A stretch of 64,000 nt of DNA from Macrostomum lignano (taxonomy: Eukaryota), in the NCBI GenBank assembly GCA_002269645.1, contig NIVC01001178.1, positions 280,003 to 344,002 on the forward strand, read 5' to 3'. Made by a program: the position numbers and the translations under genes. Below, one piece after another: positions 1,597 through 44,600 of this stretch (its first letter is position 1; each line of letters starts with the position of its first letter). The notes beneath the pieces are model-generated. The model was not told where the DNA came from. It saw only the letters and a program-made list of their open reading frames with translations, and did no database searches.

Positions 1597-3175
<1,579 letters not shown>

Positions 3176-3495
3176 ATAAATGAACAGGACTTCAATTCTA
3201 TTAAAGGATACATCAGCATCAAATGCTTTCAACCTGATTTCTAAAAGTGCGTTTTTCGTTGGTGAATTGCGCTGTCGAGGCCTACAACTGGAAACCTTGA
3301 AAACAGAAGTAGCCAAGCTGATGAGGAAGAGAGCCTTCCTTCATTAGTCATTTCCCCGACAGGTCTGCGCAGCCCCCCCCCGCGTGCCCGGTAAACAACC
3401 AGCCATCGGTGCCGCAGACCCAAAAGCCTTACGAACTGGTGCACTTTCAAGACATCGTAGCTCGAATGCAACTTTTATTCTTTTGCCTCGCCTCG

Positions 3496-4812: not shown

Positions 4813-6912
4813 ATGCAAGGCCCTAAAGAGATGGCGGAGCCACAGAAAGGACCATGGAAGCCGGACCTTCCACCAGCACCTCCTCAAAACTATCCGCGCA
4901 GTCAGAATCGACCAAAATCAGCGGCCGAAACGGCGCAAATGTTGATCAGCGAGTTCAACGACTACGGGCATCGAACCACGGTGCACGGCCTGGGCCACAT
5001 GTACCAGTCTACAGACATGAGACGCAAACTGTTCTGGCTAGCGCTCACAGTTATTGGCTCCATAGCTTGTGGAGTTCACATCTACTTCATTGTAGAAAAC
5101 TACAACGAGACTCCAGTCAATTCCGTCATTCTCAACGGTGGGGTTCGAGTGACCTTTCCAGACGTGACCCTCTGCAACATGTACCCGATCTCTGAGTCGG
5201 TGCAGAACCACGGAGTCGGTGAGATCCGGGGTCACATTAGAAAATACTGGAGATTCTTTCGCGGCTTCATCAAAGCTTCGACGGGATATGAGAATAGCAC
5301 CAGGAATCGATTTCAAATGGCCAGGAAGTTCTTTCAAATTTTCTGGGCATCCGAGGACACAAGAGACCTGGCTCACGATGATGACCTATTTCTAGTCTAC
5401 TGCAGGTACAAAAACCGTAAGTGCACTAGCAGGCATTTCAAAATGGTGCAGAACATTGTCTACTGGAACTGTTACACATTCACGCCAAAGTTTGATGGAG
5501 AGGAAGATGAGGACAGGCGCGTGTACAGTGGAAATGAAGACGACGGTCTCAACATGATTCTGTACACCAATTCGCACCTCAGAAATATCCATGCGAACAA
5601 CAGCCTCACGACTGTAGACGGAATTATAAATCTGACACGAAGCGAAGCAAAACAGGGGTTGCGTCGAGATCAGTCTAATTTTCTCGAACGCTACCTGGTG
5701 AATTACAGTCTTTCTTTGAACCAGCTGCTAGCCGGAGACAGGTTGGAGCCCGATGGAATTCGGGTCATTCTCCACGAGAAAGGAACTTACCCCCACATGG
5801 ACATGAACAGCGTGATCGTTGGTAACGGAGACTACTCCAAAGTCGTCTTCTCAATGGAGCGCAAGATTTCCAAGAACCGGCCGGATTTCCCGTGCCGAGA
5901 AACCTCCAAGGACGCCGCCGATGAGGAGGTGGAGTACGTTTCCTACTACCCTGGCGTCGATGTGAGGTACACCACCAAGAGACCGCCACCGAACTTCAAG
6001 AAGTTCAAGCGCGATCGACTCGACTACGTAGTGACTCGAGTCCAGGACCTGTTCTGGTCGAGCTGCAGCTGCTACACCCACGTGGTCCCGTTCTCGCACT
6101 TCAACTCGAAGCTGTGCTACTTTTGCAGAAACGGCACGGACCCAGTGGAGATCCGACGCACTCTCGAGCGAGTCCACTGCCACGACAGAGTCTACCAGAA
6201 CCAGCTGAAGAAGAACATCCTCACCTACTTCAGCGACTCGCAGCGCTTCCAGCCGTGCACTGGCGACGAATACGACGTGAAGATGGGCAGCTCAGCGTGG
6301 CCCAGCCAGCGCGACATCATGTTCCTCGTCGACCAGTACGTGATTCCCGCCTTCCTGCACGAGAGCGTCGGCAACCGGTCCTACAACAGCATCCTGAAGA
6401 ACACGAGAGTCTACCCGATCCGCGACATCATCGGGACGACGCCCGAACAGGCGATCGGCTCAAAGACTATCAAGTCGTTCAACTGGACCGTGGACGAGTT
6501 CCTCATTCGCAAGAGCTTCCTCAAGGTGGCCATCCACGCCGACAGCCCGACGGGAACGCTCAACGAAGAGGTCGAGAGCTACTCGTTCGCCGAGGCGCTG
6601 TCGGAGATCGGCGGCATCTTCGGCCTCTACGCCGGCGTCTCGCTGCTCACCTTCTTCGAGTTCGTCGAGCTCGCCTACCTGATGGCCACGAAGCCGAAGG
6701 AGGTGACGCGGCATGAGAAGGACGGCAAGTCGAAGTTCGCCATGCTGCAGCAAACCATGGAGGACGGAGAGCTGCCAGCCAGCGAGGTGCTCAAGTACAA
6801 GCAGCTGTTCGACCGCGGCAACTGCTGCGCCCTGCCAACGGCCAGCGCCTCCCAACAGAGCAGGAGCTTCATCATGCAAGCTGAGAGGGAGGACTCTCTT
6901 TTCCTTGCTTGA
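4813..6912 (+). CDS. DEG/ENaC (ASIC/FaNaC superfamily) sodium channel subunit, intronless, 699 aa (copy A)
   Basis: Pre-TM1 HG motif (TTVHGL), TM1, FPDVTLCN, WNCYTF, GIRVILH, Cys-containing thumb, TM2 LSEIGGIFGLYAGVSLLTFFE; AATAAA at ~7140. Confidence 0.95.
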   Translation: MQGPKEMAEPQKGPWKPDLPPAPPQNYPRSQNRPKSAAETAQMLISEFNDYGHRTTVHGLGHMYQSTDMRRKLFWLALTVIGSIACGVHIYFIVENYNETPVNSVILNGGVRVTFPDVTLCNMYPISESVQNHGVGEIRGHIRKYWRFFRGFIKASTGYENSTRNRFQMARKFFQIFWASEDTRDLAHDDDLFLVYCRYKNRKCTSRHFKMVQNIVYWNCYTFTPKFDGEEDEDRRVYSGNEDDGLNMILYTNSHLRNIHANNSLTTVDGIINLTRSEAKQGLRRDQSNFLERYLVNYSLSLNQLLAGDRLEPDGIRVILHEKGTYPHMDMNSVIVGNGDYSKVVFSMERKISKNRPDFPCRETSKDAADEEVEYVSYYPGVDVRYTTKRPPPNFKKFKRDRLDYVVTRVQDLFWSSCSCYTHVVPFSHFNSKLCYFCRNGTDPVEIRRTLERVHCHDRVYQNQLKKNILTYFSDSQRFQPCTGDEYDVKMGSSAWPSQRDIMFLVDQYVIPAFLHESVGNRSYNSILKNTRVYPIRDIIGTTPEQAIGSKTIKSFNWTVDEFLIRKSFLKVAIHADSPTGTLNEEVESYSFAEALSEIGGIFGLYAGVSLLTFFEFVELAYLMATKPKEVTRHEKDGKSKFAMLQQTMEDGELPASEVLKYKQLFDRGNCCALPTASASQQSRSFIMQAEREDSLFLA
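5744..6892. repeat. Left arm of a 1149-bp near-perfect inverted repeat (pairs with 10332-11480)
   Basis: Base-by-base comparison gave 5 substitutions (5772, 5823, 5908, 6137, 6855) and no indels. Confidence 0.95.
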
Positions 6913-7749
6913 GTTATCGCTGAATTATTTATAAGTGCTTATTTAGTGAATTATTTAAACTACTTGTCAGTAGCAACTGATGTAAAGTGCAAAAAACAAA
7001 ATAAGTTTCATTGAGCATAACCAGACCACCGTCTTCAGACTTCAACAGCAATTTAGGTACAGCTGATAAATAAATTACCCACATAGCACTACTGTCTAGT
7101 AGTGCAGATTGATTCGACGTAAGGTCCAGTAGAAAAAGCAATAAATAAAGTCTCTAGTTTGTCGAACTGCAGCATCCAAGAAGTTTCAGAGCGTTGGAAG
7201 TTGTTCATTATTCAATAAAATGCTATGTAAAACTTGATGTATTATAAATGTATAATTTTTTGCAGAAATTAGGGACAACTAAAACAGTTGTAGTTGTGTT
7301 GTGTATTAGTTATCCCATGCAGAAGTATTGCTGAATGAGTTTTTAACTGTTGACTTTCATTGAATTTACGCCTAAGTTATTGCACTTTCATGTCACTCAT
7401 AAATCACACAATACTTATTGAATTCTACACTAATTTCCTGCAATAAATGCAAATATATGTCCGTGCATCGGTTGTCTGTACCAGCCAATATGCTGCTGTC
7501 TACTCGTAACTCCGTTATCAATGAAGTTTCGTGGATTTTGTGGATGCTGAATAGACAGAAAAAAACGATAAATTTTTGGAACTGATTAGAAATCCAAATA
7601 ATAGAGGTTTTGTTTCAACAAAATTATTCTACTAATTTTAATTAGAAGTTAACAGCGAAAAAAATTTCTATACATATCGGAAGCTAAGTTTCAGCCTCTG
7701 CCGTAAGCATTGAAAACGAAGTGATTTAGAGTTCGTTAAAATCCTTCTC

Positions 7750-7935
7750 TGCCTTCCCCTTCTACCTCTGCTCCCCCTCTTCTTCTCCTTTTCTCCCCCT
7801 CCGCATCTACTCCGCCTCTGCCTCTGCTCCCCCTCTGTCTCTGCTCCCCACTCTGCCTCTGCTCCCCACTCTGCCTCTGCCCCCCCCTCTGCCTCTGCTC
7901 CCCCTCTGCCTCTAGTGATCCCCCTGCCTCTCCCA
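7750..7935. repeat. CT-rich low-complexity repeat (CTCTGCCTCTGCTCCCC-like)
   Basis: Visible directly. Confidence 0.85.
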
Positions 7936-8362
7936 CTGCGTTTGCTTAACCCACCACCCCACCCTGACTGCCCCGGCCCCTTGGCAGTCCAATACTAATT
8001 GGCTGCCGCACTACATTGTGGTTAGCCGTTTTACGTGCAGTCCCCTGCAGTGTCACCTCCTAGCATATCAGGTACCTCTCTACCCTAAGCTTGCCCTGAT
8101 TGGCCGGCTGCTTATGGCGGTTGCGGGTCGGTGCACTGCGGATTAAAGGGTCTTGACCAAATATATACTTATTCGCGCAGTGAGCCAGGGGAGACAATCT
8201 GGAATCTATTATCGCTCAGTGTCACAACTACATTACATGTAGATTTAAGACTATTGTTTCAAGCGTATCTTTAGCATGGACAACTAAAGCAACGTATATA
8301 CAGGACGCGAAACTCACGTTTCATGGAAAAAAGTTTTGAAGGCCACTTTTCGTCGAAAAATA

Positions 8363-8858
8363 CACTACGGGGATAAGAAATTTTCACTTTTTCATTATTA
8401 AAATTGTATTTGCTTTTGGTAGTAGGCAGACCCAATGTTCATCTTTTGATATGTTGTGCCTTTTTTACAGCTCTATTGACGTTTGTAAAGCTTTTTGTTC
8501 AGAAAACTATGATTCTGTGTTAATTTTTATTCTACGTACAACTGCACATGTCCTGTGTCTAAAAACGATTAAAGTGGCACAGCTCGGCTTATTGGTTTTA
8601 TGAATCTATTTTGTCATTCTTATAGCTGACTGTGTAGCAGTATGTGTAGCATTTTTTAGCATTTTTAGGTGCAGGTAATGTACGTAGAATGCAAAAATAA
8701 CATATAGAATCCTAATTTTCTAAACAAAAGCTATATAATTATCAATAGGGCTATAGGAAAGGCACAACATATCAAAAGATAAACATTGGGTCTGCCTCTT
8801 ATCGAAAGCAATAACAATTGTAATATGTAAAAAGTGAAAACTTCCTATTTCCGTAGTG
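8363..8858. mobile_element. Foldback / non-autonomous DNA transposon with CACTAC termini (CACTA/EnSpm-like), ~496 bp
   Basis: Degenerate inverted arms of ~200 bp, e.g. aggcagacccaatgttcatcttttgatatgttgtgcc (8424) vs reverse complement of 8761-8797; both ends read CACTACGG inward; no target-site duplication recognised. Confidence 0.7.
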
Positions 8859-10299
8859 TTGTTTCTTTCTACGTCCCACGGCTCATCCGGTTCCTCCGGG
8901 CCACCAAACGAGCCTCCGTCTTCCCCACCGAGGACAACGCTGCAGACAGGACCGGCAGACCTCCCAGACCGGCCCCTCGCCCTAGCCTATGCGGGTCTCT
9001 CAGGGATTAGCGGAATGGGCGACGCTCGCCTCCCCGCTGAGTCTTCGGACCGCCCTGCAGCTAAGTCAAGTAAGTCAAAAGGCCTTTAAAACAGTTTCCA
9101 TAGATTTCGAGTGTTGCGTTCTTCTACTTTAGTAGTTCTTGATCTTTATCTGATAGGCGATTACAAATTGCAACTTTCTGCATCAATAACGTACTATAAG
9201 GCTTACAAGCTATTTCTTGAATTTCAGTTTTAGGAAAGCAAAATACCAAGGTACATATAAACGCATTTTGGCTTAGTAACATCCTTCTATAGATCACTAT
9301 TCCTCAACATATTCGTCCAGAGGTAAGGAAATTTCTGTCTAACAGCAAGGCAGTGTATTAAGGCGGCTCTTGAAGTAATTTTTGCTCTCTTGAAATGCCG
9401 CCCTTCATACTGCAGCAGTTCCACCATATGCTGTACATGCATATAGCTGTAAGGTATTATTCCAGCTAAGGGGTGCACAGGGATTCACATTGCCTACATG
9501 CCCTCTGCCCCAGCCTCGCTGGAAGCACACATTATTTAGGCCAATCCGATCAATCATTCTGACCGTGCCGAAGATCTTCTTTTTAGCTGCAGTCCACCTG
9601 TGAGCCACTCGCATGCAGTGCTCTGGCTGCGTGGGCCTTTCACTGCTTTTCTTTTTTTTGAAGCCGGTTTGCTCCTCTCCTAGCAAAGTATAACAAACTA
9701 TCAATTAAATGATTGCAAAAACAATAACTTATATATGTAAGGAAACATACTAAAATTTATTAATTGACAATTAAATAAGCAATACTGTTAAGGTTTTATC
9801 TGTCCAAATAGCGGTAAAAATGGTATCAACGTAAGTCAAAGGATCAAAAGAGTTCGCATTAATCCCATTTACAGGGTACCAAAAAGTTAAAAACCGACGC
9901 CAAAACGAAAACGCGAAAATGAAAATGGCAGATAGAATATTCAGCAAATATCTGAGAAGCAGAAGAGTAATGTACAATATATCAAGGGAAATTACAAAAA
10001 CATACCAAGCTGCATATTTTTGCTGAAACGTCATTCGGTAAGATATTTATATTTAGTTCACGGATACACTTGCAAAATTATTCAGAGCAAGGCAATAGTC
10101 AATTTGCAATCCGTTAGGCCCATCCTACTAGTACTGACCTCTAACAACGCGCACCTGACTTTCTCTTCGCAAGGCATGTACAAGCCGCGCACATGTGCAC
10201 CAATGAAGCTATTCTGCTTCAAAGTCAACACCAATAATACAATGAACGGGGAACTCAACCTTCTGAATGCGTGAAAAATTGCGGCCAAAATTATTCGGG

Positions 10300-12519
10300 T
10301 CAAGAAACAATCACCGGACGTCGAACTGAACCCTCCCTCTCAGCTTGCATGATGAAGCTCCTGCTCTGCTGGGAGGCGCTGGCCGTTGGCAGGGCGCAGC
10401 AGTTGCCGCGGTCGAACAGCTGCTTGTACTTGAGCACCTCGCTGGCTGGCAGCTCTCCGTCCTCCATGGTTTGCTGCAGCATGGCGAACTTCGACTTGCC
10501 GTCCTTCTCATGCCGCGTCACCTCCTTCGGCTTCGTGGCCATCAGGTAGGCGAGCTCGACGAACTCGAAGAAGGTGAGCAGCGAGACGCCGGCGTAGAGG
10601 CCGAAGATGCCGCCGATCTCCGACAGCGCCTCGGCGAACGAGTAGCTCTCGACCTCTTCGTTGAGCGTTCCCGTCGGGCTGTCGGCGTGGATGGCCACCT
10701 TGAGGAAGCTCTTGCGAATGAGGAACTCGTCCACGGTCCAGTTGAACGACTTGATAGTCTTTGAGCCGATCGCCTGTTCGGGCGTCGTCCCGATGATGTC
10801 GCGGATCGGGTAGACTCTCGTGTTCTTCAGGATGCTGTTGTAGGACCGGTTGCCGACGCTCTCGTGCAGGAAGGCGGGAATCACGTACTGGTCGACGAGG
10901 AACATGATGTCGCGCTGGCTGGGCCACGCTGAGCTGCCCATCTTCACGTCGTATTCGTCGCCAGTGCACGGCTGGAAGCGCTGCGAGTCGCTGAAGTAGG
11001 TGAGGATGTTCTTCTTCAGCTGGTTCTGGTAGACTCTGTCGTGGCAGTGGACTCGCTCGAGAGTGCGTCGGATCTCCACTGGGTCCCTGCCGTTTCTGCA
11101 AAAGTAGCACAGCTTCGAGTTGAAGTGCGAGAACGGGACCACGTGGGTGTAGCAGCTGCAGCTCGACCAGAACAGGTCCTGGACTCGAGTCACTACGTAG
11201 TCGAGTCGATCGCGCTTGAACTTCTTGAAGTTCGGTGGCGGTCTCTTGGTGGTGTACCTCACATCGACGCCAGGGTAGTAGGAAACGTACTCCACCTCCT
11301 CATCGGCGGCGTCCTCGGAGGTTTCTCGGCACGGGAAATCCGGCCGGTTCTTGGAAATCTTGCGCTCCATTGAGAAGACGACTTTGGAGTAGTCTCCGTT
11401 GCCAACGATCACGCTGTTCATGTCCATGTGGGGGTAAGTTCCTTTCTCGTGAAGAATGACCCGAATTCCATCGGGCTCCATTTTATCGCCTGCCAGCAGC
11501 TGGTTCAGAGACAGATTGTAGTTCACCAGGTAGCGCTCTAAATAGTTTGACTTATCACCGTTTGAACTGTCTTTACCGTTATTTTCCTCATCGTAGAAGC
11601 CCTTTGTCGTTGTCAATGCGTTACTAGCGTGAATATTTCTGAGGTGTGAATTGGTGTACATGATGAGGTTCAAGCCCTCGTCTTCGTTGCCGCTGTACAC
11701 GCGCCTGTCCTCCTCCTCCTCTCCGTCGAACTTTGGCGTGAATGTGTAGCAGTTCCAGTAGTCGATGTTTTGAACCATTTTGAACTGCTTGTTAGAGCAG
11801 GGACGACTTTTATACCTGCAGTAAACTAGAAATAGGTCGTCGTCGTGAGCCAGGTCTCTTGTGTCCTCGGATGCCCAGAAAATTTGAAAGAACTTCCTGG
11901 CCATTTTAAATCTATCCTTGGTGCTGTTGTCCATTCCGGCTGAGGCTTTGATGAAGCCGCGAAAGAATCTCCAGTATTTTCTAATGTGACCCCTGATCTC
12001 ACCGGCTCCGTGGTTCTGCACCGACTCCGAGATCGGGTACATGTTGCAGAGGGTCACGTCTGGAAAATTCACGTGGACTCCACCGTTTAGAATGACGGAA
12101 TTAACTGGAGTTTCGTTGTAGTTGGCCACAATGAAGTAGATGTGAATGCCGCAGGCAAAGCATCCAACGATAGTGATGAGGAGCCAAAATAACTTTCGTC
12201 TGACATCTGTGGACTGGTACATGTGGCCCAGGCCGTGTACCGTGGTTCGATGCCCGTAGTCGTTGAACTCGCTGATCAACAACTTGACGGTTTCAGAGGA
12301 TTTTTTCTTCTTTCGCTGGTCCATACGCGCCTGCTGAGGTCGATAGGCAGCAGGTTGTGCAGCTGGTTGTTGCTGCTGTATGATGCCTTCTTGTGGTTGC
12401 TGAGCCGTCGATTGGGGCGAAATCTGCGACGCCTGCTGCGAGGCTTGCTGCGATCTGTGATCGCTTGCTTCTTCAGCATTGCTGCTGTTTCCATCAGGCA
12501 TGATCGGCTGCAGTATCAT
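10300..12519 (-). CDS. DEG/ENaC sodium channel subunit, intronless, 739 aa (copy B, inverted paralog of copy A)
   Basis: Same family motifs as copy A; Q-rich N-terminal extension; start Met uncertain (M1, M7 or M66). Confidence 0.95.
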   Translation of the reverse strand: MILQPIMPDGNSSNAEEASDHRSQQASQQASQISPQSTAQQPQEGIIQQQQPAAQPAAYRPQQARMDQRKKKKSSETVKLLISEFNDYGHRTTVHGLGHMYQSTDVRRKLFWLLITIVGCFACGIHIYFIVANYNETPVNSVILNGGVHVNFPDVTLCNMYPISESVQNHGAGEIRGHIRKYWRFFRGFIKASAGMDNSTKDRFKMARKFFQIFWASEDTRDLAHDDDLFLVYCRYKSRPCSNKQFKMVQNIDYWNCYTFTPKFDGEEEEDRRVYSGNEDEGLNLIMYTNSHLRNIHASNALTTTKGFYDEENNGKDSSNGDKSNYLERYLVNYNLSLNQLLAGDKMEPDGIRVILHEKGTYPHMDMNSVIVGNGDYSKVVFSMERKISKNRPDFPCRETSEDAADEEVEYVSYYPGVDVRYTTKRPPPNFKKFKRDRLDYVVTRVQDLFWSSCSCYTHVVPFSHFNSKLCYFCRNGRDPVEIRRTLERVHCHDRVYQNQLKKNILTYFSDSQRFQPCTGDEYDVKMGSSAWPSQRDIMFLVDQYVIPAFLHESVGNRSYNSILKNTRVYPIRDIIGTTPEQAIGSKTIKSFNWTVDEFLIRKSFLKVAIHADSPTGTLNEEVESYSFAEALSEIGGIFGLYAGVSLLTFFEFVELAYLMATKPKEVTRHEKDGKSKFAMLQQTMEDGELPASEVLKYKQLFDRGNCCALPTASASQQSRSFIMQAEREGSVRRPVIVS
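10332..11480. repeat. Right arm of the 1149-bp inverted repeat
   Basis: Reverse complement of 5744-6892 with 5 substitutions. Confidence 0.95.
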
Positions 12520-14689
12520 GTCCGCAGTCTTTTCTTACAATCCGATTGACAGACTGCAAAACTGAGAAACGGTTTTGGTTTATTTATCTCGCGCAACGCG
12601 ATGGATGCAGTCGAGGATGATGCAAGAACTGTGCGAACAGTTATTTCGCCAGGGTTCCCGGTTGAAAACAACGTCGATAGAGTCGGAGGGAAAGAGGGGC
12701 TGAAGGCCAGTATGTTGGTACGATGCCTCGTGTTCATTGGTAGCCGGCAGAATCGTTCGGGTCTGGGGATGTTCAGGATTGAAAGGTTTTAGAAGTTTTT
12801 TACCTTCGGCGCGTACATCGGCGTGACGCATCTGTGCACGCAGCTTACTACTAGTTACGGTTCCGAACGCTGCATACATGTAGTAGCTTTTATCGGAAGA
12901 TCGGTGTACGAAAAATACATTCGCTAGTGCGCTAGTGCGGTCGATGCTGCGGAAAAGTCAATGCCGCATCTACCTTGAAGTAGTCAAGTTTACAGGTTTG
13001 TCCTAGTCAATTCACAGGTACGTATTATCAAAGCTATTAAATAAGCCAGCCGATCTCTATACTGATACGTGTTTTAAGCTGTATAAACACTGATTACGCA
13101 AAACTTGACGTTATTTGATGGCGGTTGAACGAGTACTAAAAGATTTATATAAAAAACGACCTTTCACTGTACATTTTTCTCACACACTTTTCATGGGCTG
13201 CAATCGGAGAAAGGGATGTACAAGGTAATAACCACGATTCTGAATTTTTTAGGAACCCAAACTTGGATCCTTATAAACACCAGACACCAGAAGCGCAATA
13301 GCCAGGATTTGTATGAGGCGCCATCGAGAACGCCCGCACCAGAGGCTTCATTGTGAGTGCCAGCACTAAAAGGTGCCGCAGCTGGTGTGAAGGGGTACTT
13401 TACTCAAAGTCCACTATTTTAGTAGGACCATAGGACCATGGAGACAGGCGTACTTATGGCTTGCTTAAAAAGCTCGCAAGCTGACCTAGTTATTCTAGTA
13501 TCTGTGGCTAATACCCAGACGGTTGCCAAACTTTTCTTCTGCAGAGAAGGAGTTACGCTCGAATAAGTGGGACTTTGCAACTTTGCAATCAATCTTAAGA
13601 GCCACCATAGAAAGCTGTCTTTTGTGTAAAGTTAAGAGATCGCAAACTAAGTTGCGTTGAGCAAGCCATAAATGCAATTTCTCCATCCGACGCTTATGGT
13701 CCGACGTAAAGACCTCCTGGCTACAGAACACCCCCACCAGAGACAATTACACTGTAAATACAGTATATGGATGCAACATTAATATGCGTGTCGCTACTTA
13801 ACATATACACGTACATGTAGCTACAATCGCGCCGTCCTTGACATGCCTACATCAACCTCGTCATGCATACTAAAAAGAAAACTTTTACTTCTTGCTAGAA
13901 TAACACAGTTAGACGTGTACATGCGCACGCATCTGCAGTAGAAATGGGAATCTGCAGCATCATTGTGAGAAAAAACAGGAAAAGGCCTCCCCTGTCCGGG
14001 CTCGATGGAACGAAAATGTCAGTCTAATTACCGAATGAACTGGGGCGCTTCCAACAGGCTATCTGTAAGCCCACGCGTACATGTATATAAGCCCCGGGGA
14101 TTCTAAAACATACATGCACATATAGAAGCTACACGTCAAGAGGAAAATGGAGAGGGCTCTTCCAACTGTTAGTGCGGCTATATTGCCCATGATATTCTAG
14201 GTGCCGCGTGGCTTGCAGACCAGCTTCACCAACAACATCGGTGCTTGGATCTGTTCGGGGAGGAAAACTGAGATAAAAAAGGAAAAATCTCTTTCCGATA
14301 AATTCGCTTCCTACTGCCCGACAACCAGTCATTCAGCATGAGCCTAGATCTAGAGGATCAGGGACCAGTGAGGATTGCCATGCCATGCCTAAAGCTATTT
14401 TCTGGTGTGGAAAATTAACTTTGCACTTTAATATTGTGCAACCGCCGGCAATATTAATTGTCACGGTATAAATATATTATAGGACCCGTATTTCAGCAAG
14501 TCAAGGATGTTTATATAAAAAAGGAGACAGCAGACACAAGCAGGCCATTGTAAACTTTGCTTGTAGCAAACTGTTTTCCTCCAGAAAGCAGACGACGTTC
14601 TGCAGCAGACAGACTTTTCCTAGCTAATGTGTGCTCCGTGTGTATTTTTACTGCATAGAATATACCCCGACCGAAAATATTTGTCCTTT

Positions 14690-15310
14690 CAAAAACAGTA
14701 AGTGTGCCAGTTGTGCCACAAATATGCCCTTTGACAGAGTTATAAATGTCTTTGTATGTCATATTTGGCACACTTGATACAATTGTACCAATTGTGCCGT
14801 AGCTATGCCATTTGGCACAGTTTGTAAATGTCGATGTATGTCCTATTTGGCACACTTGACACAAATAGTATTTTTACTGATAATTGGCCAATGAAACCAA
14901 TTGGCACACTTGGCACACTTGCTACAATTGTGCCAGTTTTGCCACAGCTATACCATTTAGCACAGTTATAAATGTCTTTGTATGTCCTATTTGGCACACC
15001 TGGCACAAATAACCTTTTTATAGCTAATTCCTCTTGGAAACCATTTGGCACACTTGGCGCACTTACTACAAGTGTACCAGTTGTGCCACAGCCATACTAT
15101 TTGACACAGTTATATAACTGTCTTGGACTGTCCTTCTTGGCACACTTGGCACGAATATCCTTTTTATAGCTAATTGGTTATTAAAACAGACTGGCACACT
15201 TGGCACACTTGCTACAATTGTACCAGTTGTGCCACAGCTATGACATTTGGCACAGTTATATGTCTTTGTCCTTCTTGGCACACTTGGCTCAAATAACCTT
15301 TTTTATTGCT
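14690..15310. repeat. Degenerate ~140-bp tandem repeat rich in TGGCAC/GTGCCA motifs
   Basis: Recurrent ggcacacttggcac and gtgccagttgtgccacag; 4-5 units. Confidence 0.75.
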
Positions 15311-15391
15311 AATTACCTAACAAAACTGTTTGACGCACACCCGGTGCAACTTGCACTGAGGCTGCGACGTCAGTAGCTTCGATTTTGGCAG

Positions 15392-16208
15392 ATGACCGGC
15401 AGGTTTTCACTCCCAACTTGCGGCATGATCTGCTCAGACGCTCGAAAATGGCGCAACCGCGTTTGATTGACGCCATTACAAAAGAACTAAAGCAGCAGAT
15501 CACGCAACATCTCGCCGTCCATCTAGATCAGCTCGTGGACCCAGCCGTCACAGTTGACAACATGCTGGTCGACGACAGTGGAAAGAAATTATACTACGGT
15601 AAGAAATTAATAGTCCTTCATTTATGATCGCGCAAATATCCTATTGTTACTCTCAAACGCTCTTCAATCCTTAAAAAACACCTCTGCAGCCAATCGGTTT
15701 CGCCTTTACGTCCAACGTCGCTCGGACCAGGGTCATGGCCAGTAAGGATATATCAAGAACCAACGACTCCGGCCAACCTCAATGCACTTCTCCGCGAGAT
15801 GGTGCGGGGGTGCTTCAGCGACGACGAGATTTTGGTAACGTCGTTGAGCGGTCGCGCTACTGAGCCTGGTCGGCCACGCCTGCTACCTGGCTGGAATCGA
15901 CATCCCAACCAATGAAAGCGATTGAAAAGGCCTACGTCCGATGCTCCATCACCGTCAGTCGGCGTGAAAAGCAATCCGGACGTTTGCCTGTAAAGAAACT
16001 TCGTCAAGGTGCGGCTGCCAATGTCACTGACACTGTGCAGTCGGAGGCGGCTAATGCACTCGCGAGGACTGAGCGCGGGATATCTGCTGTTGCATCTAGC
16101 AAAACTAAACTTGTTTGGCAGATGCGGGACCCGTCTAGCTTGGTCTGTCTCCCTCATGTTTCTGGTTTTGTTTTCCCCTGGAAATATGCTCTTTTCCACA
16201 TAAAGTAA
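15392..16208 (+). pseudogene. Possible degraded BEN-domain-like coding relic
   Basis: Exon-like 15392-15598 (ttttggcag / gtaaga), second acceptor at 15689; peptide NLNALLREMVRGCFSDDEILVTSLSGRATEPGRPRLLP (~15775-15890) resembles the BEN core from memory; frames broken. Confidence 0.35.
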
Positions 16209-16939
16209 CCAACTACATTACTATAGTTAGTTCCAGACTCGTAAATTACAATAGCACCAGGAATCAGACTTGTTGTCTAACTAGAAAAGTATAGGGGAAC
16301 AGAGGTATTGGAGTTGGTTTCACTAATTGCTTGTTTTTTATCTAGTTGTTTGTTTGTGCTTTTTAAATTAATACATTAGATGTATACATGTTGTTACATT
16401 AAAATCCTGTGCCACGTGTAGTCGACTCAGTAGTTAATTTGTTACATTGCATGTTTTAGTTTCAAATGTATTAGAAGTGTAAACTCTTTGGCTGGCACCA
16501 CAATTTTCATGCACCGCGCTTTTTAATTACGTTGTTTTTTGTTTCCTGTCCAATGTCCGCTGTCTGTTATGTTTCTTTCCGTTAACTTCTAGTATGCATT
16601 TTTTAATTCCGCAGCCTCCCCTTTTTCCTGTTTTATACATGTTTTTTGTCCTATTTGCTACTTCCCATTAAATATATACGTATTTATGCAACATCCCTTT
16701 TTCCAACTGTTTTAAATCTGTTTATGTTCGCGCTCAACATTATTTTAAAGTTTAATTTACATTGACAACTCTTTTCAATTTGTCTTCCCTCATTTAAACA
16801 TGAGAAGGACCTCTCGCAAATCTTAGCTACTTCATACACTTCATAACTCGTAGTTGACTAACGGGTCAACTATAACAGCATCAGATAGCATATTATGTGC
16901 TTAGTTCAACTGCTTTAAACTGCAATTCACTCGTCTGGA

Positions 16940-17195
16940 GAATTTACGCCAAATGGCACAGTACGCGCTAGTTTAACTGCTTCTAGCTGCACATTTACTC
17001 GTATGGTGCCAAATGGTCCATTTATGGCACAGTTGTGCACAATTATAAGCACTCAAAAATAGCTGAGACAACTGGCACAGTTGTGGCACAGTTGTGGCAC
17101 AGCAGTGCACAATTAAAAATTTGATTCTTAATTGTGTCACATGTGCCAATTGGCACAGCTTGGCACAGTTATATTTGTGCCAAGCTGTGCCACCA
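16940..17195. repeat. Second TGGCAC-motif cluster
   Basis: ggcacagttgtggcacagttgtggcac, gtgccaattggcacagcttggcac. Confidence 0.65.
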
Positions 17196-17491
17196 ATTGT
17201 CGATTCTCACAAATTTCGTGTCGTTTCGACAGTTATTTTGGGATTCCCCCCAATTCATTTTTTATGTGCTATTTGACGCATTTAAAGAACAATTATTTCC
17301 GGTCGGGACATGCACAGTTCACTGTGTGCACCACACTGCAGCACAACGGCCAGGTAATAAAAATTGCATCTGATGCATAAGGTTAGCGATGCATCAGACA
17401 TCAAATATTTCTGCATCTAACAGGAAAAAAATTCCCAAGAAAAATATAATCAACCAATTCATATCAGTTTATAAGTACACATTGACGAGTT

Positions 17492-20400: not shown

Positions 20401-23244
20401 AAACAGTTAAGATTTTTTAAAGATTTCGAAAGATCTCAAAGATCTCTAGATGCGCGGCGCATTGAAGGCTGCGTACGGCTGTTCAGTCCAAGGACTGCTG
20501 GGGGTCGCCACACAGCCTCAATTACCCCAGCTAATGCTGGCACCCATTTTACAGCTGGGTGAACTGAAGCAATGCAGAGTTAGGTGTCCTACTTAAGGAC
20601 ACAAATTTTTTCGAGTGGATCGCGAAACCGTGAGTCCGATGCTAATAGGACTAATAGGACAAGAATCACTCGCACACAGGGGCGTCGCCATGGATTTTAT
20701 GGTGGGGGGACAAAGCCAATAATTATACATGTACATGACTAAATTCTTGTATATGTACATTATTTTCAGAATCGGTGTTGTAGGCACTCATTTTAGCGCC
20801 GCAGGCACTCATTTTAGCGCCGCAGGCACTCATTTTAGCGCCGCAGGCACTCATTTTAGCGTCGCAGGCACTTATTTTAGCGTCGCAGGCACTCATTTTA
20901 GCGCCGCAGGCACTCATTTTAGCGTCGCAGGCACTCATTTTAGCGCCGCAGGAACTCATTTTAGCGTCGCAGGCACTCATTTTAGCGTCGCAGGCACTCA
21001 TTTTAGCGTCGCAGGCACTCATTTTAGCGCCGCAGGCACTCATTTTAGCGCCGCAGGCACTCATTTTAGCGTCGCAGGCACTCATTTTAGCGTCGCAGGC
21101 ACTCATTTTAGCGTCGCAGGCACTCATTTTAGCGCCGCAGGCACTCATTTTAGCGCCGCAGGCACTCATTTTAGCGTCGCAGGCACTCATTTTAGCGTCG
21201 CAGGCACTCATTTTAGCGTCGCAGGCACTCATTTTAGCGCCGCAGGCACTCATTTTAGCGCCGCAGGCACTCATTTTAGCGCCGCAGGCACTCATTTTAG
21301 CGTCGCAGGCACTCATTTTAGCGTCGCAGGCACTCATTTTAGCGTCGCAGGCACTCATTTTAGCGCCGCAGGCACTCATTTTAGCGCCGCAGGCACTCAT
21401 TTTAGCGTCGCAGGCACTCATTTTAGCGTCGCAGGCACTCATTTTAGCGTCGCAGGCACTCATTTTAGCGCCGCAGGCACTCATTTTAGCGCCGCAGGCA
21501 CTCATTTTAGCGCCGCAGGCACTCATTTTAGCGCCACAGGCACTCATTTTAGCGCCGCAGGCACTCATTTTAGCGCCGCAGGCACTCATTTTAGCGCCGC
21601 AGGCACTCATTTTAGCGCCACAGGCACTCATTTTAGCGTCGCAGGCACTCATTTTAGCGTCGCAGGCACTCATTTTAGCGCCACAGGCACTCATTTTAGC
21701 GCCGCAGGCACTCATTTTAGCGTCGCAGGCACTCATTTTAGCGTCGCAGGCACTCATTTTAGCGTCGCAGGCACTCATTTTAGCGCCACAGGCACTCATT
21801 TTAGCGTCGCAGGCACTCATTTTAGCGCCACAGGCACTCATTTTAGCGCCGCAGGCACTCATTTTGGCGCCACAGGCACTCATTTTAGAACCGCAGGCAC
21901 TCATTTTAGCGCCGCAGGCACTCATTTTAGCGCCGCAGGCACTCATTTTGGCGCCACAGGCACTCATTTTAGCGCCGCAGGCACTCATTTTAGCGTCGCA
22001 GGCACTCATTTTAGCGCCGCAGGCACTCATTTTAGCGCCTCAGGCACTCATTTTAGCGCCGCAGGCACTCATTTTGGCGCCACAGGCACTCATTTTAGCG
22101 CCGCAGGCACTCATTTTAGTGCCGCAGGCACTCATTTTAGCGTCGCAGGCACTCATTTTAGCGTCGCAGGCACTCATTTTAGCGCCGCAGGCACTCATTT
22201 TAGCGCCGCAGGCACTCATTTTAGCGTCGCAGGCACTCATTTTAGCGTCGCAGGCACTCATTTTAGCGTCGCAGGCACTCATTTTAGCGCCGCAGGCACT
22301 CATTTTAGCGCCGCAGGCACTCATTTTAGCGCCGCAGGCACTCATTTTAGCGTCGCAGGCACTCATTTTAGCGCCGCAGGCACTCATTTTAGCGCCGCAG
22401 GCACTCATTTTAGCGTCGCAGGCACTCATTTTAGCGTCGCAGGCACTCATTTTAGCGTCGCAGGCACTCATTTTAGCGCCGCAGGCACTCATTTTAGCGT
22501 CGCAGGCACTCATTTTGGCGCCACAGGCACTCATTTTAGCGCCGCAGGCACTCATTTTGGCGCCACAGGCACTCATTTTGGCGCCGCAGGCACCCATTTT
22601 GGCGCCACAGGCACTCTGTTTTGTCGCCCTGCAGCAAAATTATTGATTTCCATAACGGGTCACAAGGTGGGGTTGGGAAGAATTGGCAATTTGGAAGGGG
22701 ACATGTCCCCCCTGTCCCCCTCCCATTGGCGACGCTTCTCGCACACCCAAAGACGCAGTCACCACAATATATCAGATATATCTGAAGGTACCTAAAATCA
22801 TGTCATAGAGCCATACATTTTTCAGTCATAGTCCTGCAATGTAGTTTTAAACAAGCCAAACTTTACCTTTGCACAGACGCCACAGGAAGCCGTAATTCAC
22901 TGAGCCATCCGAGTTAATCCAGTCAGTTCGAGCTGGCCAACCGGTCGTGGCAAAACGTTTTAACAAAACCGGTTGATTTGCGTGTAAATATCTGCAGTGA
23001 ATCAGCAGTTTATATACGAAGTTCTTTAGTTAGTCAAAAATGGTTTAAGGGGGTGTAGTTACATGTACAAGGAGCAATGGACAGTGATTATTTCTAACTT
23101 TCTACCCTTTCAATTGCATAAAAAAGCATCTACAAACCTGCGATAAATCTCCTTCGGATCACACTCCTCAGTTAAAACCGTCACGGGCAGTTCCTCTCCG
23201 AGTTGTAGTTTCTCAAACCTCGCAACTCGATCGGCAGAATCCAT
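17492..23244 (-). CDS. JMJD4: JmjC-domain 2OG/Fe(II) oxygenase JMJD4, 5 exons, ~411 aa
   Basis: Exons (minus) 23244-23138, 22991-22867, 20385-20079, 18595-18208, 17800-17492; all GT-AG with matching phases; motifs LYLKDWH, SDWLNEY, YRFVYLGP, TPFHCDVFGSYSWS, FVPSGWHHQV, ISINHNW. Confidence 0.93.
18790..19890. repeat. 23-bp minisatellite (GAGTGCTCAATAGAGATTCTCAA) in JMJD4 intron 3
   Basis: Visible directly. Confidence 0.95.
20463..20660 (-). mobile_element. tRNA-derived SINE copy, head degraded, in JMJD4 intron 2
   Basis: Shares ctcaattaccccagctaatgctggcacccattttacagctgggtgaactgaagcaatgcagagtt with the copy at 54408-54634. Confidence 0.8.
20677..22737. mobile_element. hAT-type MITE carrying an internal minisatellite
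   Basis: Left end CAGGGGCGTCGCCA, right end TGGCGACGCTT; 8-bp direct repeat CTCGCACA at 20669-20676 and 22738-22745. Confidence 0.7.
20772..22612. repeat. 21-bp minisatellite (GCG[C/T]CGCAGGCACTCATTTTA), ~88 units
   Basis: Visible directly; variant units interspersed. Confidence 0.98.
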
Positions 23245-41600: not shown

Positions 41601-44600
41601 GAAACTGCTAAACATAAAAAAGCACAATGTCAAACATAAAAGAGGCACCATGTCAAACATTACATGGGCACCATGTAAAACATATACGTCACTCTATGTC
41701 AAACATTAAAGAGCCACCATGTGAAACATAAAAGAGTCACCATTTCGAAAATTAAAGAGCCACCACGTCGAACATTAAAGACCCACCATGTCAAACGTAA
41801 AAGAGCCACCATGAAGAACATTAAATAGCCACCATGCCAAACATAAAAGAGCCACTATGTCGAACATTAAAGAGCTAGCATGTCAAACATTAAAGAGCCA
41901 CCATGTCGAACATAAAAGAGCCGCCATGTAAAACATTAAACAGCCACATTGTCAAACATAAAAGAGCCACCATGTAAGACATTTAAGAGCCACCATGTGA
42001 AACATTTAAGAGCCACCATGTCAAACCTAAAAGAGCCACCATGTCGAACATAACAGAGCTACCATGTCAAACATTAAAAAGCCACCATGTCCAACTTAAA
42101 CGAGCCATTATGTCGTACATTAAAGAGCCACCATGTCAAACATTAAACAGCCACCATGTCAAACACAGAAGAGCCACAATGTCAAACATAGATGAGCCAC
42201 CATGTCAGATATTAAAAAGCCACCGTATCAAACATAAAAGAGTTACCATGTAGAACAAAAAAGAGCCACCATGTCGAACATAAAAGAGCCACCATGTCAA
42301 ACATAAAAGAGCCAACATGTCAAACCTAAACGAGCCACCATGTCTAATATTTAAGAGACACCATGTATAAGTGACTTTATGTCAAACATTAAAGAGCCAC
42401 CATGTCAAGCATAAAAGAGCCACCATGTCAAACATTAAAGAGCCACCATGTCGAACGTTAAAGAGCCACCATGTCAAGCATAAAAGAGCCACCATGTCAA
42501 ACATTAAAAAGCCATGTCAAACACTAAAGAGCCACCATGTCGAAAATAAACGAGCCATTATGTCGTACATTAAAGAGCCACCATGTCAGACATTAAAGAG
42601 CCACTATGTCAAACATAAAATAGCCACTATGTCAAACATTAAAGAGCCATCATTACATTAAGGTGCCACCAGGTCAAACATTAAAGAGCCACCATGTCAA
42701 ACATTAAAGAGCCACCATGTCGAACATTAAAGAGCCATCATGTCAAACATAAAAGAGCCACTATGTCAAACAATAAAGGGACACCATGTCAGACATTAAA
42801 AAAAACCCGAATCAAACATAAGAGAGCCACCATGTAGAACATTAAAGAGCCACCATGTCAAACATATATGTGACTCCATGTCAAATATATACGTGACTCC
42901 ATGTCACACATAAAAGAGCCACCATGTAAAACATATACACATGACTACATAACAAACATTAAACAGCCATCATGTCGAACATTAAAGAGCCATCATGTCA
43001 AAAATTAAAGAGCCACCATGTCAAACATTAAAGACCCACCATGTCAAACATAAAAGAGCCACCATGAAAAGCATATACGTGACTCCATGCCAAATATATA
43101 CGTGACTCCATGTCAAACACAGACGTGACTCCATGTGAAACACTAGAGAGCCACCATGTCAAACATTGAAGAGCCACGATGTCAAACATTTAAGAGCACC
43201 ATGTTAAACATAAAGGAGCCACCATGTCGAACATTAAAGAGCCACCATTTCAAACATTAAAGAGCCATCATTACATTAAGGTGCCACCAGGTCAAACATT
43301 AAAGAGCCACCATGTCAAACATTAAAGAGCCACCATGTCGAACATTAAAGAGCCATCATGTCAAACATAAAAGAGCCACTATGTCAAACAATAAAGGGAC
43401 ACCATGTCAGACATTAAAAAAAACCCGAATCAAACATAAGAGAGCCACCATGTAGAACATTAAAGAGCCACCATGTCAAACATAGAAGAGCCACCATGTC
43501 AAACATAAAACAGCCACCATGTCAAACATAAAAGAGCCACCATGTCAAACATAAAAGAGCCATCATGTCAAACATATATGTGACTCCATGTCAAATATAT
43601 ACGTGACTCCATGTCACACATAAAAGAGCCACCATGTAAAACATATACACATGACTACATAACAAACATTAAACAGCCATCATGTCGAACATTAAAGAGC
43701 CATCATGTCAAAAATTAAAGAGCCACCATGTCAAACATTAAAGACCCACCATGTCAAACATAAAAGAGCCACCATGAAAAGCATATACGTGACTCCATGC
43801 CAAATATATACGTGACTCCATGTCAAACACAGACGTGACTCCATGTGAAACACTAGAGAGCCACCATGTCAAACATTAAAGAGCCACGATGTCAAACATT
43901 TAAGAGCACCATGTTAAACATAAAGGAGCCACCATGTCGAACATTAAAGAGCCACCATTTCAAACATTAAAGAGCCATCATTACATTAAGGTGCCACCAG
44001 GTCAAACATTAAAGAGCCACCATGTCAAACATTAAAGAGCCACCATGTCGAACATTAAAGAGCCATCATGTCAAACATAAAAGAGCCACTATGTCAAACA
44101 ATAAAGGGACACCATGTCAGACATTAAAAAAAACCCGAATCAAACATAAGAGAGCCACCATGTAGAACATTAAAGAGCCACCATGTCAAACATAGAAGAG
44201 CCACCATGTCAAACATAAAACAGCCACCATGTCAAACATAAAAGAGCCACCATGTCAAACATAAAAGAGCCATCATGTCAAACATAAAGGAGCCACCATG
44301 TCAATCAAAAAAGAGCCACCATGTCAAACTTAAAACAGCCACCATGTCAAACATAAAGGAGCCACCATGTCAAACATTAAAGAGCCGCAATGTCAAACAT
44401 TGAAGAGCCATCATGTCAAACATTGAAGAGCCACCATGTCAAACATTAAAGAGCCACCATGTCGAACATTAAAGAGCCACCATGTCCAACATATATGTGA
44501 CTCCATGTCAAACATTATAGAGCCAGCATGTCAAACATTAAAGTGCTACCATGTCAAACATAGAAGAGCCACCATGTCGAACAATAACGAGTCACCATGT

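What the first reader, a model, noticed from the sequence alone, without database searches (positions are those of the whole stretch)
4813..12519. Half-homogenised inverted DEG/ENaC gene pair: shared pore half, divergent sensor half
Seen: two intronless paralogs face each other. From 5744 to 6892 they differ at only 5 of 1149 nt (2 amino acids: K/E, T/R). Upstream of a sharp boundary at the LEPDGIRV codons they carry many synonymous and amino-acid changes, and identity also stops abruptly 6-10 codons before the stops, giving different tails (DSLFLA vs GSVRRPVIVS). Established: arms of inverted repeats can be homogenised by gene conversion; DEG/ENaC channels are trimers with the pore built mainly by TM2 and modulators sensed in the finger region. 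Inference: ongoing arm-to-arm conversion keeps thumb, TM2 and cytoplasmic tail interchangeable while the N-terminus, TM1 and finger diverge. This would be a constant-region/variable-region design for a co-assembling channel pair.
Basis: partly seen in the sequence, partly recalled or inferred. Interest (0 to 1): 0.78.

Follow-up and report, generated by a model that had tools for sequence, protein, structure and literature searches.

The report
Gene conversion between inverted channel paralogs
Two tail-to-tail copies of a flatworm DEG/ENaC sodium-channel gene keep their last 1.15 kb almost identical through repeated, GC-biased gene conversion while the rest has drifted apart; this is a real example of a well-known process, and nothing here shows it is a purposeful 'constant/variable region' design.

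Summary
Two intronless, convergent DEG/ENaC genes (A 4813-6912 +, B 10300-12519 -) differ at 5 of 1149 nt in 5744-6892, against 19% in the 5' part. dS is 0.012 in the tract and 0.6-0.76 upstream. The window is Macrostomum lignano assembly Mlig_3_7. An independent homeologous contig shows the same arrangement, boundary and tract, so a contig-specific assembly artefact is unlikely. Non-allelic gene conversion is the best explanation, and it looks recurrent. GC3 steps from 0.61/0.66 to 0.86 at the boundary and rises to 0.9-1.0 near the 3' end, while a single-copy paralog stays flat. The 5' half holds an older tract (5157-5376, dS about 0.26). Two derived A>G changes sit in both arms of one homeolog only. 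The adaptive reading is unsupported. Gene A has no transcript-based gene model, shows AT-biased synonymous decay, and is a pseudogene (stop at codon 145) in the homeolog. The 5' half evolves under purifying selection (omega about 0.13-0.15), not diversifying selection. The predicted finger region lies in the least diverged part of that half. Mosaic concerted evolution with raised GC3 is already described for other gene pairs, so this is a new member of a known kind.

The parts
4813..6912 (+). Gene A: intronless DEG/ENaC (Pfam ASC) ORF of 699 aa. It is intact in this window but has no gene model.
   Evidence: HG motif at residues 58-59, FPDVT at 115, G-V-S at 608
10300..12519 (-). Gene B: intronless DEG/ENaC ORF of 739 aa, annotated as Mlig030741 (protein P0001).
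5744..6892 (+). Young conversion tract, A arm: 5 differences from the B arm, dS 0.012, GC3 0.86.
10332..11480 (-). Young conversion tract, B arm (mirror of 5744-6892; position in B = 17224 minus position in A).
6138..6854 (+). Core of the tract: a 717-nt run identical between the arms, with GC3 0.9-1.0. It contains sites 6430 and 6447, which are shared by both arms within a locus but differ between homeologs.
5596..5745 (+). Hypervariable, indel-bearing patch just upstream of the boundary (B mirror about 11479-11625). Synonymous sites are saturated, and A and B are as far apart here as each is from the outgroup. It is a likely barrier to heteroduplex extension.
5157..5376 (+). Older conversion tract of intermediate age inside the 'divergent' half (B mirror 11845-12064). 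7 of 74 third positions differ, against 33% overall; dS is about 0.26.
6893..6912 (+). A-specific C-terminal tail (DSLFLA) and stop codon, with no convincing homology to B's tail.
10300..10331 (-). B-specific C-terminal tail (GSVRRPVIVS) and stop codon.
6913..10299 (.). Unique spacer of 3.4 kb between the convergent genes. The two sides show no mirror homology except the inner inverted repeat.
8355..8865 (.). AT-rich inner inverted repeat (arms 8355-8540 and 8679-8865, 82% identical) near the middle of the spacer. It folds as a hairpin of about 200 bp. Any role is unknown.

Best explanation
A and B are old inverted (convergent) duplicates of an intronless DEG/ENaC gene in Macrostomum lignano. 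Where conversion has not reached, their synonymous sites are saturated. Non-allelic homologous exchange between the two arms (interparalog gene conversion) has repeatedly overwritten parts of the coding sequence, and now does so only in the 3' 1.15 kb. On the 5' side the exchange stops just downstream of a highly diverged, indel-bearing patch. On the 3' side it stops where alignable sequence ends. Heteroduplex repair is GC-biased, so third-codon positions in the converted part have stayed or become GC-rich, while the escaped 5' halves decay towards AT. Shown: the tract, its statistics, its presence in two homeologous loci, the GC3 step, and the layered ages. Inferred: the molecular route (heteroduplex formation and repair between the arms), the barrier role of the diverged patch, and that conversion is still going on. 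The pattern is most simply a by-product of recombination mechanics plus purifying selection on gene B, not a selected design.
For: (1) dS is 0.012 in 5746-6892 and 0.59-0.76 in 4942-5745, with dN/dS about 0.13-0.18 in both. The identity therefore extends to silent sites and cannot be due to protein-level selection. P = 2e-94. (2) An independent contig, NIVC01000293.1 (L003), differs by 2.2-2.4% in the non-coding parts of the locus, which matches the published homeolog divergence (PMC10733133). It carries the same convergent pair, the same boundary, and 3 differences in the tract. (3) GC3 is 0.61 (A) and 0.66 (B) in the 5' half and 0.86 in the 3' half (Fisher 2e-13 and 5e-10). It rises to 0.9-1.0 towards the 3' end. 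The single-copy paralog P0005 is flat at 0.79 and 0.84 (p = 0.18). One recent copy of a long-independent 3' half would not give this. (4) The ages are layered: dS(A-B) is 0.83, 0.26, 1.11, saturated, 0.03, 0 and 0 along the gene. The 5157-5376 segment is significant (p = 2.4e-6, 0 of 300 permutations), and its dS to the outgroup is not reduced. (5) Site patterns inside the tract are incompatible. Sites 5823 and 6855 are paralog-specific in both loci. Sites 6430 (Ile>Val; the outgroup has Ile) and 6447 are derived A>G changes present in both arms of L003/L004 and in neither arm of the window. (6) Copy number is constant at two genes in both loci. (7) A mosaic pattern with raised GC3 is the accepted signature of conversion-driven concerted evolution (PMC2720389).
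Against: Only one species and effectively two versions of the locus are available, because L004 is nearly identical to L003. The post-split event rests on two sites 17 nt apart. The assembly was polished with Pilon using short reads and RNA-seq (PMC5730564), and 93% of read pairs in this genome map to several places (PMC10733133). Single-site patterns inside a 99.6% identical tract could therefore be polishing artefacts. Within-locus A-B differences (5 and 3) are no fewer than between-locus differences (4 and 4), so conversion since the homeolog split has not been frequent. The GC3 contrast is polarised with a single outgroup. The A=B versus outgroup AT>GC excess is only p = 0.034. No reads were examined.
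Confidence: 0.8

Rival explanations
1. One-off event. A single recent conversion, or a patch-like replacement of 1.15 kb, happened shortly before the homeologs split, and nothing has happened since. The 'ongoing' element is an illusion.
For: Both homeologous loci share the same boundaries. Differences within a locus (5 and 3) equal those between loci (4 and 4), which is a star-like pattern. The only post-split signal is two neighbouring sites that polishing could have created.
Against: The GC3 step and gradient need a long-lasting difference in regime between the halves. A second, older tract lies at 5157-5376. The derived states at 6430 and 6447 sit in both arms of one homeolog.
Confidence: 0.12
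2. Selected modular design. Selection holds the boundary in place so that two co-assembling subunits share an identical thumb, TM2 and tail but differ in the N-terminus, TM1 and extracellular loops.
For: A is intact in the window. dN/dS is about 0.09-0.15 for A's 5' half, both against B and between homeologs, so A has been under constraint for most of its history. The boundary is the same in two homeologs. A similar idea has been proposed for other mosaic pairs (PMC2720389, discussion).
Against: A has no transcript-based gene model. A carries a stop at codon 145 in L003. A's lineage shows 16:0 GC>AT synonymous change. There is no sign of diversifying selection. The finger-aligned segment is the least diverged part of the 5' half and was itself converted earlier. 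Both boundaries sit where conversion would stop mechanically. The region upstream of A is full of tandem repeats and 6% diverged between homeologs, against 1.2% upstream of B.
Confidence: 0.06
3. Assembly or polishing artefact. The two 3' halves are really diverged and were homogenised by collapse or by Pilon correction, or the inverted arrangement is a chimeric join.
For: The assembly is redundant, polished with short reads and RNA-seq, and 36% of it by length lies in chimeric scaffolds (PMC5730564, PMC10733133). Contig L004 ends in the spacer about 200 nt from where gene A would end.
Against: An independently assembled homeologous contig reproduces the arrangement, the boundary and the tract, while differing by 2.2-2.4% in its flanks. 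The arms still differ at 5 and 3 sites. Reads from a sequence 19% diverged would not map, so polishing could not create a sharply bounded 1.15 kb tract. There are no Ns in the window. The GC3 gradient is a property of the sequence and not of the identity between arms.
Confidence: 0.03
4. Reverse history. A and B are a very recent inverted duplication, and one copy's 5' half was later overwritten from a third, diverged paralog.
For: Identity ends abruptly at 6892, as a duplication breakpoint would, with each gene reading through into a new tail.
Against: No flanking non-coding sequence is shared, which a recent duplication should leave. The 5' half is itself a mosaic of several ages. The only other paralog found is 65-69% identical. 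Both 5' halves are about equally far from the outgroup. This history also leaves the GC3 step unexplained.
Confidence: 0.02

Closest known systems
Mosaic concerted evolution of mammalian gene pairs BMP8A/B (inverted), DDX19A/B and TUBG1/2 (Carson and Scherer 2009, PMC2720389)
   Same: There are two paralogs at constant copy number. Part of the gene is homogenised by conversion while the rest diverges. The boundaries are sharp and conserved. GC3 is raised in the concerted part. BMP8A/B is also an inverted pair.
   Different: The genes here are intronless, only 3.4 kb apart and convergent. The evidence spans two homeologs of one species rather than many species. One partner shows signs of decay.
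Arm-to-arm gene conversion in large palindromes (primate Y and X ampliconic genes; e.g. PMC4772468, and Rozen et al. 2003 from memory)
   Same: Inverted arms are kept near-identical by intrachromosomal conversion.
   Different: In classical palindromes the arms are near-identical over non-coding sequence as well, with a short spacer. Here homology is limited to coding sequence, only the 3' half is homogenised, and the 3.4 kb spacer is unique.
GC-biased conversion among intronless Hsp70 paralogs, including inverted pairs (Kudla et al. 2004; Bettencourt and Feder 2002; recalled from memory, not checked here)
   Same: Intronless paralogs, conversion confined to the coding region, and raised GC3 in the converted part.
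   Different: In Hsp70 essentially the whole coding sequence is homogenised and both copies are expressed. Here only part is homogenised, and expression of A is doubtful.
Gene conversion among ion-channel paralogs (Nav channels of Taricha newts, PMC8476164)
   Same: Partial conversion tracts move sequence between paralogous channel genes.
   Different: In the newts, short tracts spread adaptive toxin-resistance substitutions. No adaptive substitution is identifiable here.
DEG/ENaC channels; the closest solved structures are FMRFamide-gated Na+ channels (7yvb), then ASIC5 and ASIC1
   Same: Full-length Pfam ASC match, the HG motif, the post-TM1 FPxVTxCN motif, a Cys-rich ectodomain, and a TM2 with a G-x-S motif.
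   Different: Only the TM1-to-finger and palm-to-TM2 parts align to the solved structures (E 2.5e-23 at best). There is an insertion of about 40 residues before the GIRVILH strand, judged against ASIC1 from memory. The gating stimulus is unknown. The M. lignano DEG/ENaCs tested for peptide gating were other genes and gave no response (PMC9234716).

Membership tests
DEG/ENaC (Pfam ASC, PF00858) | Full-length match to the family profile above the curated threshold | tested here: met
   A scores 168.6 bits and B 176.3 bits against a cut-off of 23.6, covering profile positions 1-455 of 455.
DEG/ENaC (Pfam ASC, PF00858) | Two transmembrane segments flanking a large Cys-rich ectodomain, with the HG motif before TM1 and FPxVTxCN after TM1 | tested here: met
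   There is a hydropathy peak at residues 72-95. HG is at 58-59 and FPDVT at 115. There are 14 Cys between the N-terminus and residue 693. TM2 aligns to the TM2 of FaNaC, ASIC5 and ENaC.
DEG/ENaC (Pfam ASC, PF00858) | G/S-x-S selectivity-filter motif in TM2 | tested here: met
   G608-V-S610 lies in '...GLYAGVSLLTFFEFVE', aligned to 'GLWMGISVLT' of FaNaC and 'GLFCGASLIT' of ASIC5.
DEG/ENaC (Pfam ASC, PF00858) | Trimeric, amiloride-sensitive cation channel activity | not testable with these tools
   This needs expression and electrophysiology. The AlphaFold model was unusable (mean pLDDT 30).
FaNaC (peptide-gated subfamily) | Placement inside the FaNaC clade and gating by FMRFamide-type peptides | tested here: inconclusive
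   FaNaC is the best PDB match, but only partially (E 2.5e-23, two stretches). No phylogeny was made. Published tests of other M. lignano relatives found no peptide response (PMC9234716). The pair is not filed as FaNaC.
Interparalog gene conversion / mosaic concerted evolution | A sharply bounded tract whose silent-site divergence is far below that of adjacent homologous sequence | tested here: met
   dS is 0.012 against 0.59-0.76, P = 2e-94, and the identical run is 717 nt against a permutation maximum of 174.
Interparalog gene conversion / mosaic concerted evolution | Raised GC3 in the concerted part relative to the divergent part and to a non-converting relative | tested here: met
   GC3 is 0.86 against 0.61 and 0.66, and the outgroup is flat at 0.79 and 0.84.
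Interparalog gene conversion / mosaic concerted evolution | Paralogs within a genome or locus share derived states that are absent from the orthologous or homeologous locus | tested here: inconclusive
   Two sites (6430, 6447) show this pattern, and two others (5823, 6855) show the opposite. The numbers are small and polishing is a caveat.
Interparalog gene conversion / mosaic concerted evolution | 3' halves cluster by species and 5' halves by ortholog across sister species | not testable with these tools
   No sequences from other Macrostomum species were found in the protein collection.
Classical palindrome (Y-chromosome type) | Arms near-identical over coding and non-coding sequence up to a short spacer | tested here: not met
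   Homology is limited to 4940-6892, the flanks show no similarity, and the spacer is 3.4 kb and unique.

The most novel reading that the evidence does not exclude
The conversion boundary is held by selection, so that two co-expressed subunits share an identical thumb, pore-lining TM2 and cytoplasmic tail but differ in the N-terminus, TM1 and extracellular loops. That would be a conversion-maintained 'constant/variable' pair for heteromeric DEG/ENaC channels. A mechanistic variant is that the roughly 200-bp hairpin-forming inverted repeat near the middle of the spacer acts as a fragile site that starts the exchanges. This would fit identity and GC3 being highest towards the 3' ends.
Probability: 0.06. 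Interest if true: 0.6.

Novelty: new member of a known kind. Interest (0 to 1): 0.25.

Why it matters
The pair is a clean, compact example of partial concerted evolution. It has layered conversion tracts, a clear GC-biased signature and a natural time marker, the recent genome duplication of M. lignano. That makes it useful for studying how duplicates escape conversion, and as a warning for anyone building DEG/ENaC trees or dating duplications in this genome, because the two halves of the gene give different ages. It also gives indirect evidence for GC-biased gene conversion in a flatworm. It does not open a new question about channel function unless gene A proves to be expressed and to co-assemble with B.

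Tried and rejected
(1) A third paralog in the window: the 688-aa ORF at 20729-22795 is a translated 21-nt minisatellite with spurious Pfam hits, not a channel. (2) Residual homology in the flanks: local and global alignments of the 3' flanks, the 5' flanks and the mirrored spacer intervals score at the level of shuffled sequence. (3) The whole locus as an old palindrome centred on the inner inverted repeat: in the window the inner repeat shares its axis with the gene arms to within 3 nt, but in L003 it is 96 nt off. The exact symmetry is therefore not conserved and is probably chance. (4) Rfam scan of the spacer: no match. (5) Structure prediction to place the boundary on the fold: mean pLDDT was 30 with a 3-sequence alignment, so the model was unusable and no fold search was run. 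Domain placement rests on sequence alignments to FaNaC and ASIC and on motifs. (6) Sister-species orthologs: the protein search returned only M. lignano sequences, so the tree test could not be run. (7) Literature on the gene: no paper mentions Mlig030741, and the M. lignano channels tested by Dandamudi et al. are other genes. (8) Purifying selection as the sole cause of the identity: rejected, because synonymous sites are identical too. (9) A reduced synonymous rate as the cause of the 5157-5376 segment: rejected, because dS to the outgroup there is 1.07-1.35.

Full report
SOURCE AND GENES. The window is part of contig NIVC01001178.1 of the Macrostomum lignano DV1 assembly Mlig_3_7 (GCA_002269645.1). 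The protein of the minus-strand gene is found there and nowhere else with that exact sequence. The finding covers two long ORFs. Gene A is 4813..6912 (+, 699 aa) and gene B is 10300..12519 (-, 739 aa). They are convergent, with 3,387 nt between the stop codons. Both match the Pfam ASC (DEG/ENaC) profile from position 1 to 455 within a single ORF (E 3e-49 and 1.5e-51). Both carry the family motifs: HG before TM1, FPDVTLCN after TM1, a Cys-rich ectodomain, and G-V-S in TM2. The closest solved structures are FMRFamide-gated Na+ channels (7yvb, E 2.5e-23), then ASIC5 and ASIC1, but only the TM1-to-finger and palm-to-TM2 parts align. No other paralog lies in the window. The 688-aa ORF at 20729-22795 is a translated minisatellite.

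THE OBSERVATION. It is correct in every detail. From 5744 to 6892 the arms differ at five positions: 5772, 5823, 5908, 6137 and 6855. Two change an amino acid (K/E and T/R). Upstream, 151 of 803 aligned nt differ, and the N-terminal 40-80 residues barely align. Identity ends at 6892, leaving the tails DSLFLA and GSVRRPVIVS. Nei-Gojobori estimates give dS 0.59-0.76 and dN 0.075-0.12 for the 5' part, against dS 0.012 and dN 0.002 for the tract. The probability of five or fewer differences at the 5' rate is 2e-94. The longest identical run is 717 nt, against at most 174 in 10,000 permutations. Because silent sites are identical, selection on the protein cannot be the cause. Nucleotide homology is confined to the coding sequence. 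Neither the 5' flanks, the 3' flanks nor the mirrored halves of the spacer score above shuffled sequence.

AN INDEPENDENT COPY OF THE LOCUS. Gene B belongs to a protein cluster with a second member on two other contigs. One of them, NIVC01000293.1 (L003), carries the whole locus. It has the same convergent pair, the same boundary, and three differences between the arms in the tract. Non-coding parts of the locus differ from the window by 2.2-2.4%, and by up to 6% upstream of A. That matches the published divergence among the three subgenomes of this recent polyploid: 2.2% overall and 1.9-2.4% between subgenomes (PMC10733133). The other contig, L004, is nearly identical to L003 and ends in the spacer. 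The mosaic is therefore older than the split of the homeologs. It is also reproduced in an independently assembled contig, which argues strongly against a contig-specific collapse or chimeric join. The window has no N gaps.

ONE EVENT OR MANY. Four observations point to repeated exchange. (a) GC3. The shared 3' part has GC3 0.86, against 0.61 (A) and 0.66 (B) in the 5' parts (Fisher 2e-13 and 5e-10). The step sits at the identity boundary, and GC3 climbs to 0.9-1.0 towards the 3' end. The single-copy paralog P0005 (65-69% identical, on another contig with no inverted partner) is flat at 0.79 and 0.84 (p = 0.18). If a 3' half that had evolved independently for dS of about 0.7 had simply been copied once, it should look like the 5' halves. 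A long-standing GC-biased conversion regime explains the contrast, and raised GC3 is a recognised companion of concerted evolution (PMC2720389). (b) Layered ages. Along the gene, dS(A-B) is 0.83, 0.26, 1.11, saturated, 0.03, 0 and 0. The low segment at 5157-5376 is significant (7 of 74 third positions differ against 33% overall; p = 2.4e-6; 0 of 300 permutations). It is not a slow-evolving region, because its dS to the outgroup is 1.07-1.35. In 5596-5745, A and B are as far apart as each is from the outgroup, so the duplication is much older than the average 5' divergence suggests. (c) Incompatible site patterns inside the tract. Sites 5823 and 6855 separate A from B in both loci. Sites 6430 and 6447 separate the window from L003/L004, with both arms agreeing within each locus. 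At 6430 the outgroup has the window's Ile, so the Val (A>G) is derived and has reached both arms of the L003 lineage. Site 6447 is also A>G. (d) The remaining arm differences are private to one arm of one locus (5766, 5772, 5908, 6137).

CAVEATS. The assembly was polished with Pilon using short genomic reads and RNA-seq (PMC5730564), and most reads in this genome map to several places. Single-site patterns inside a 99.6% identical tract, as in point (c), could therefore be artefacts. Polishing cannot create a sharply bounded 1.15 kb tract from sequence that is 19% diverged. Differences within a locus (5 and 3) are as many as those between loci (4 and 4), so exchange since the homeolog split has been rare.

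WHERE THE BOUNDARIES LIE. The 5' edge lies between 5743 and 5772. That is just downstream of the most diverged stretch of the gene (5596-5745), which has saturated silent sites, dN of 0.37 and a one-codon indel. The 3' edge is the last alignable base before the unrelated tails and flanks. Both are the places where heteroduplex formation would be expected to fail. This step is inference from the known sensitivity of homologous exchange to mismatches.

THE ADAPTIVE READING. The shared part does contain the Cys-rich thumb-like region, TM2 and the cytoplasmic tail, and the divergent part contains the N-terminus and TM1. However, the segment that aligns to the finger region of FaNaC (about residues 116-188) is the least diverged part of the 5' half, and it coincides with the older conversion tract. 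The 5' half shows purifying selection (omega 0.13-0.155), not diversifying selection. Gene A has no gene model on either contig, although the annotation was built from transcript evidence. Its lineage shows 16 GC>AT and no AT>GC synonymous changes, against 10:8 for B (Fisher 0.003). Its upstream kilobase is filled with tandem repeats and is 6% diverged between homeologs, against 1.2% for the 580 nt upstream of B. In L003 a complex mutation at 5247-5263, with a 4-nt deletion, puts a stop at codon 145. Its 5' half shows omega of about 0.09 between homeologs (9 synonymous and 3 non-synonymous changes outside the lesion). Loss of one of three subgenome copies is also common here, and the outgroup's homeolog in L002 has lost the region before TM2 as well. 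A may therefore still function from the window's subgenome, but nothing here shows expression, co-assembly or selection on the boundary. No functional data exist for this gene. The M. lignano DEG/ENaCs that were tested, alone and in combination, are other genes and gave no peptide response.

COMPARISON WITH WHAT IS KNOWN. Mosaic concerted evolution means that part of a gene pair is homogenised by conversion with raised GC3 while the rest diverges behind conserved boundaries. It has been described for BMP8A/B (an inverted pair), DDX19A/B and TUBG1/2. The idea that the concerted part preserves a shared interaction surface while other domains diverge has already been proposed there (PMC2720389). 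Arm-to-arm conversion in palindromes and conversion among ion-channel paralogs are also documented (PMC4772468, PMC8476164). The present locus is not a classical palindrome, because homology is limited to coding sequence. It is a new member of a known kind.

VERDICT. Conversion is supported and is probably recurrent and GC-biased (confidence about 0.8). The 'constant/variable design' is unsupported (about 0.06). Interest is low to moderate (0.25). The locus is a tidy example with a useful internal time marker, but a specialist would not find it surprising.

Noticed in passing
window 8355-8865 (arms 8355-8540 and 8679-8865); L003 13637-14144: An AT-rich inverted repeat in the spacer folds as a hairpin of about 200 bp (DNA fold z = -19.6). 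In the window its axis coincides with that of the gene arms to within 3 nt, but in the homeolog L003 it is 96 nt off, so the exact symmetry is probably chance. It has no Rfam match and no other copy in the window or in L002 and L005.
   Followed up: partly
window 7951-9100: This part of the spacer, which includes the hairpin repeat, differs from L003 by only 0.17%, while the neighbouring spacer segments differ by 2.2-2.3%. The cause is unknown. It could be constraint, exchange between homeologs, or polishing of a repeat family.
   Followed up: no
L003 about 17400-17440 (equivalent to window 5247-5263): The homeologous copy of gene A carries a clustered complex mutation (7 substitutions and a 4-nt deletion within 17 nt). 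The new sequence resembles nearby sequence (TTCAAAGCTTCA), which suggests a template-switch event. It creates a stop at codon 145.
   Followed up: partly
L002 10001-11710 compared with L005 10001-12067: The outgroup paralog has two homeologous copies. The L002 copy loses alignment after about nt 1590 of the coding sequence and lacks TM2, so it is truncated or rearranged. This looks like another case of gene loss after the genome duplication in this family.
   Followed up: partly
L004 (NIVC01003962.1), contig end at the equivalent of window ~7114: This contig stops in the spacer about 200 nt beyond the position of gene A's stop codon, and its last 600 nt align poorly, with many small gaps. This probably reflects an assembly break at the inverted repeat.
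   Followed up: no
window 14665-17308: About 2.6 kb is present in the window but absent from both L003 and L004. It is an insertion or deletion between homeologs upstream of gene B, and it contains a called 68-aa gene at about 15448-15745.
   Followed up: no
window 20782-22616: A 21-nt minisatellite of 87 copies gives open frames of 435-688 aa on both strands. These produce spurious Pfam hits (LbR_Ice_bind, SNAP).
   Followed up: yes
window 41610-47087, 1600-3178, 47850-48866, 52159-53027 and others: The window is very rich in tandem repeats, for example a 23-nt unit in 239 copies and AGAC/AGAT microsatellites of about 1.5 kb. This explains most of the long ORFs and the strong strand skews.
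   Followed up: partly
window 49897-50718: An ORF matches the C-terminal part of a RabGAP-TBC domain (E 7.5e-13). It is probably an exon of a multi-exon gene.
   Followed up: no
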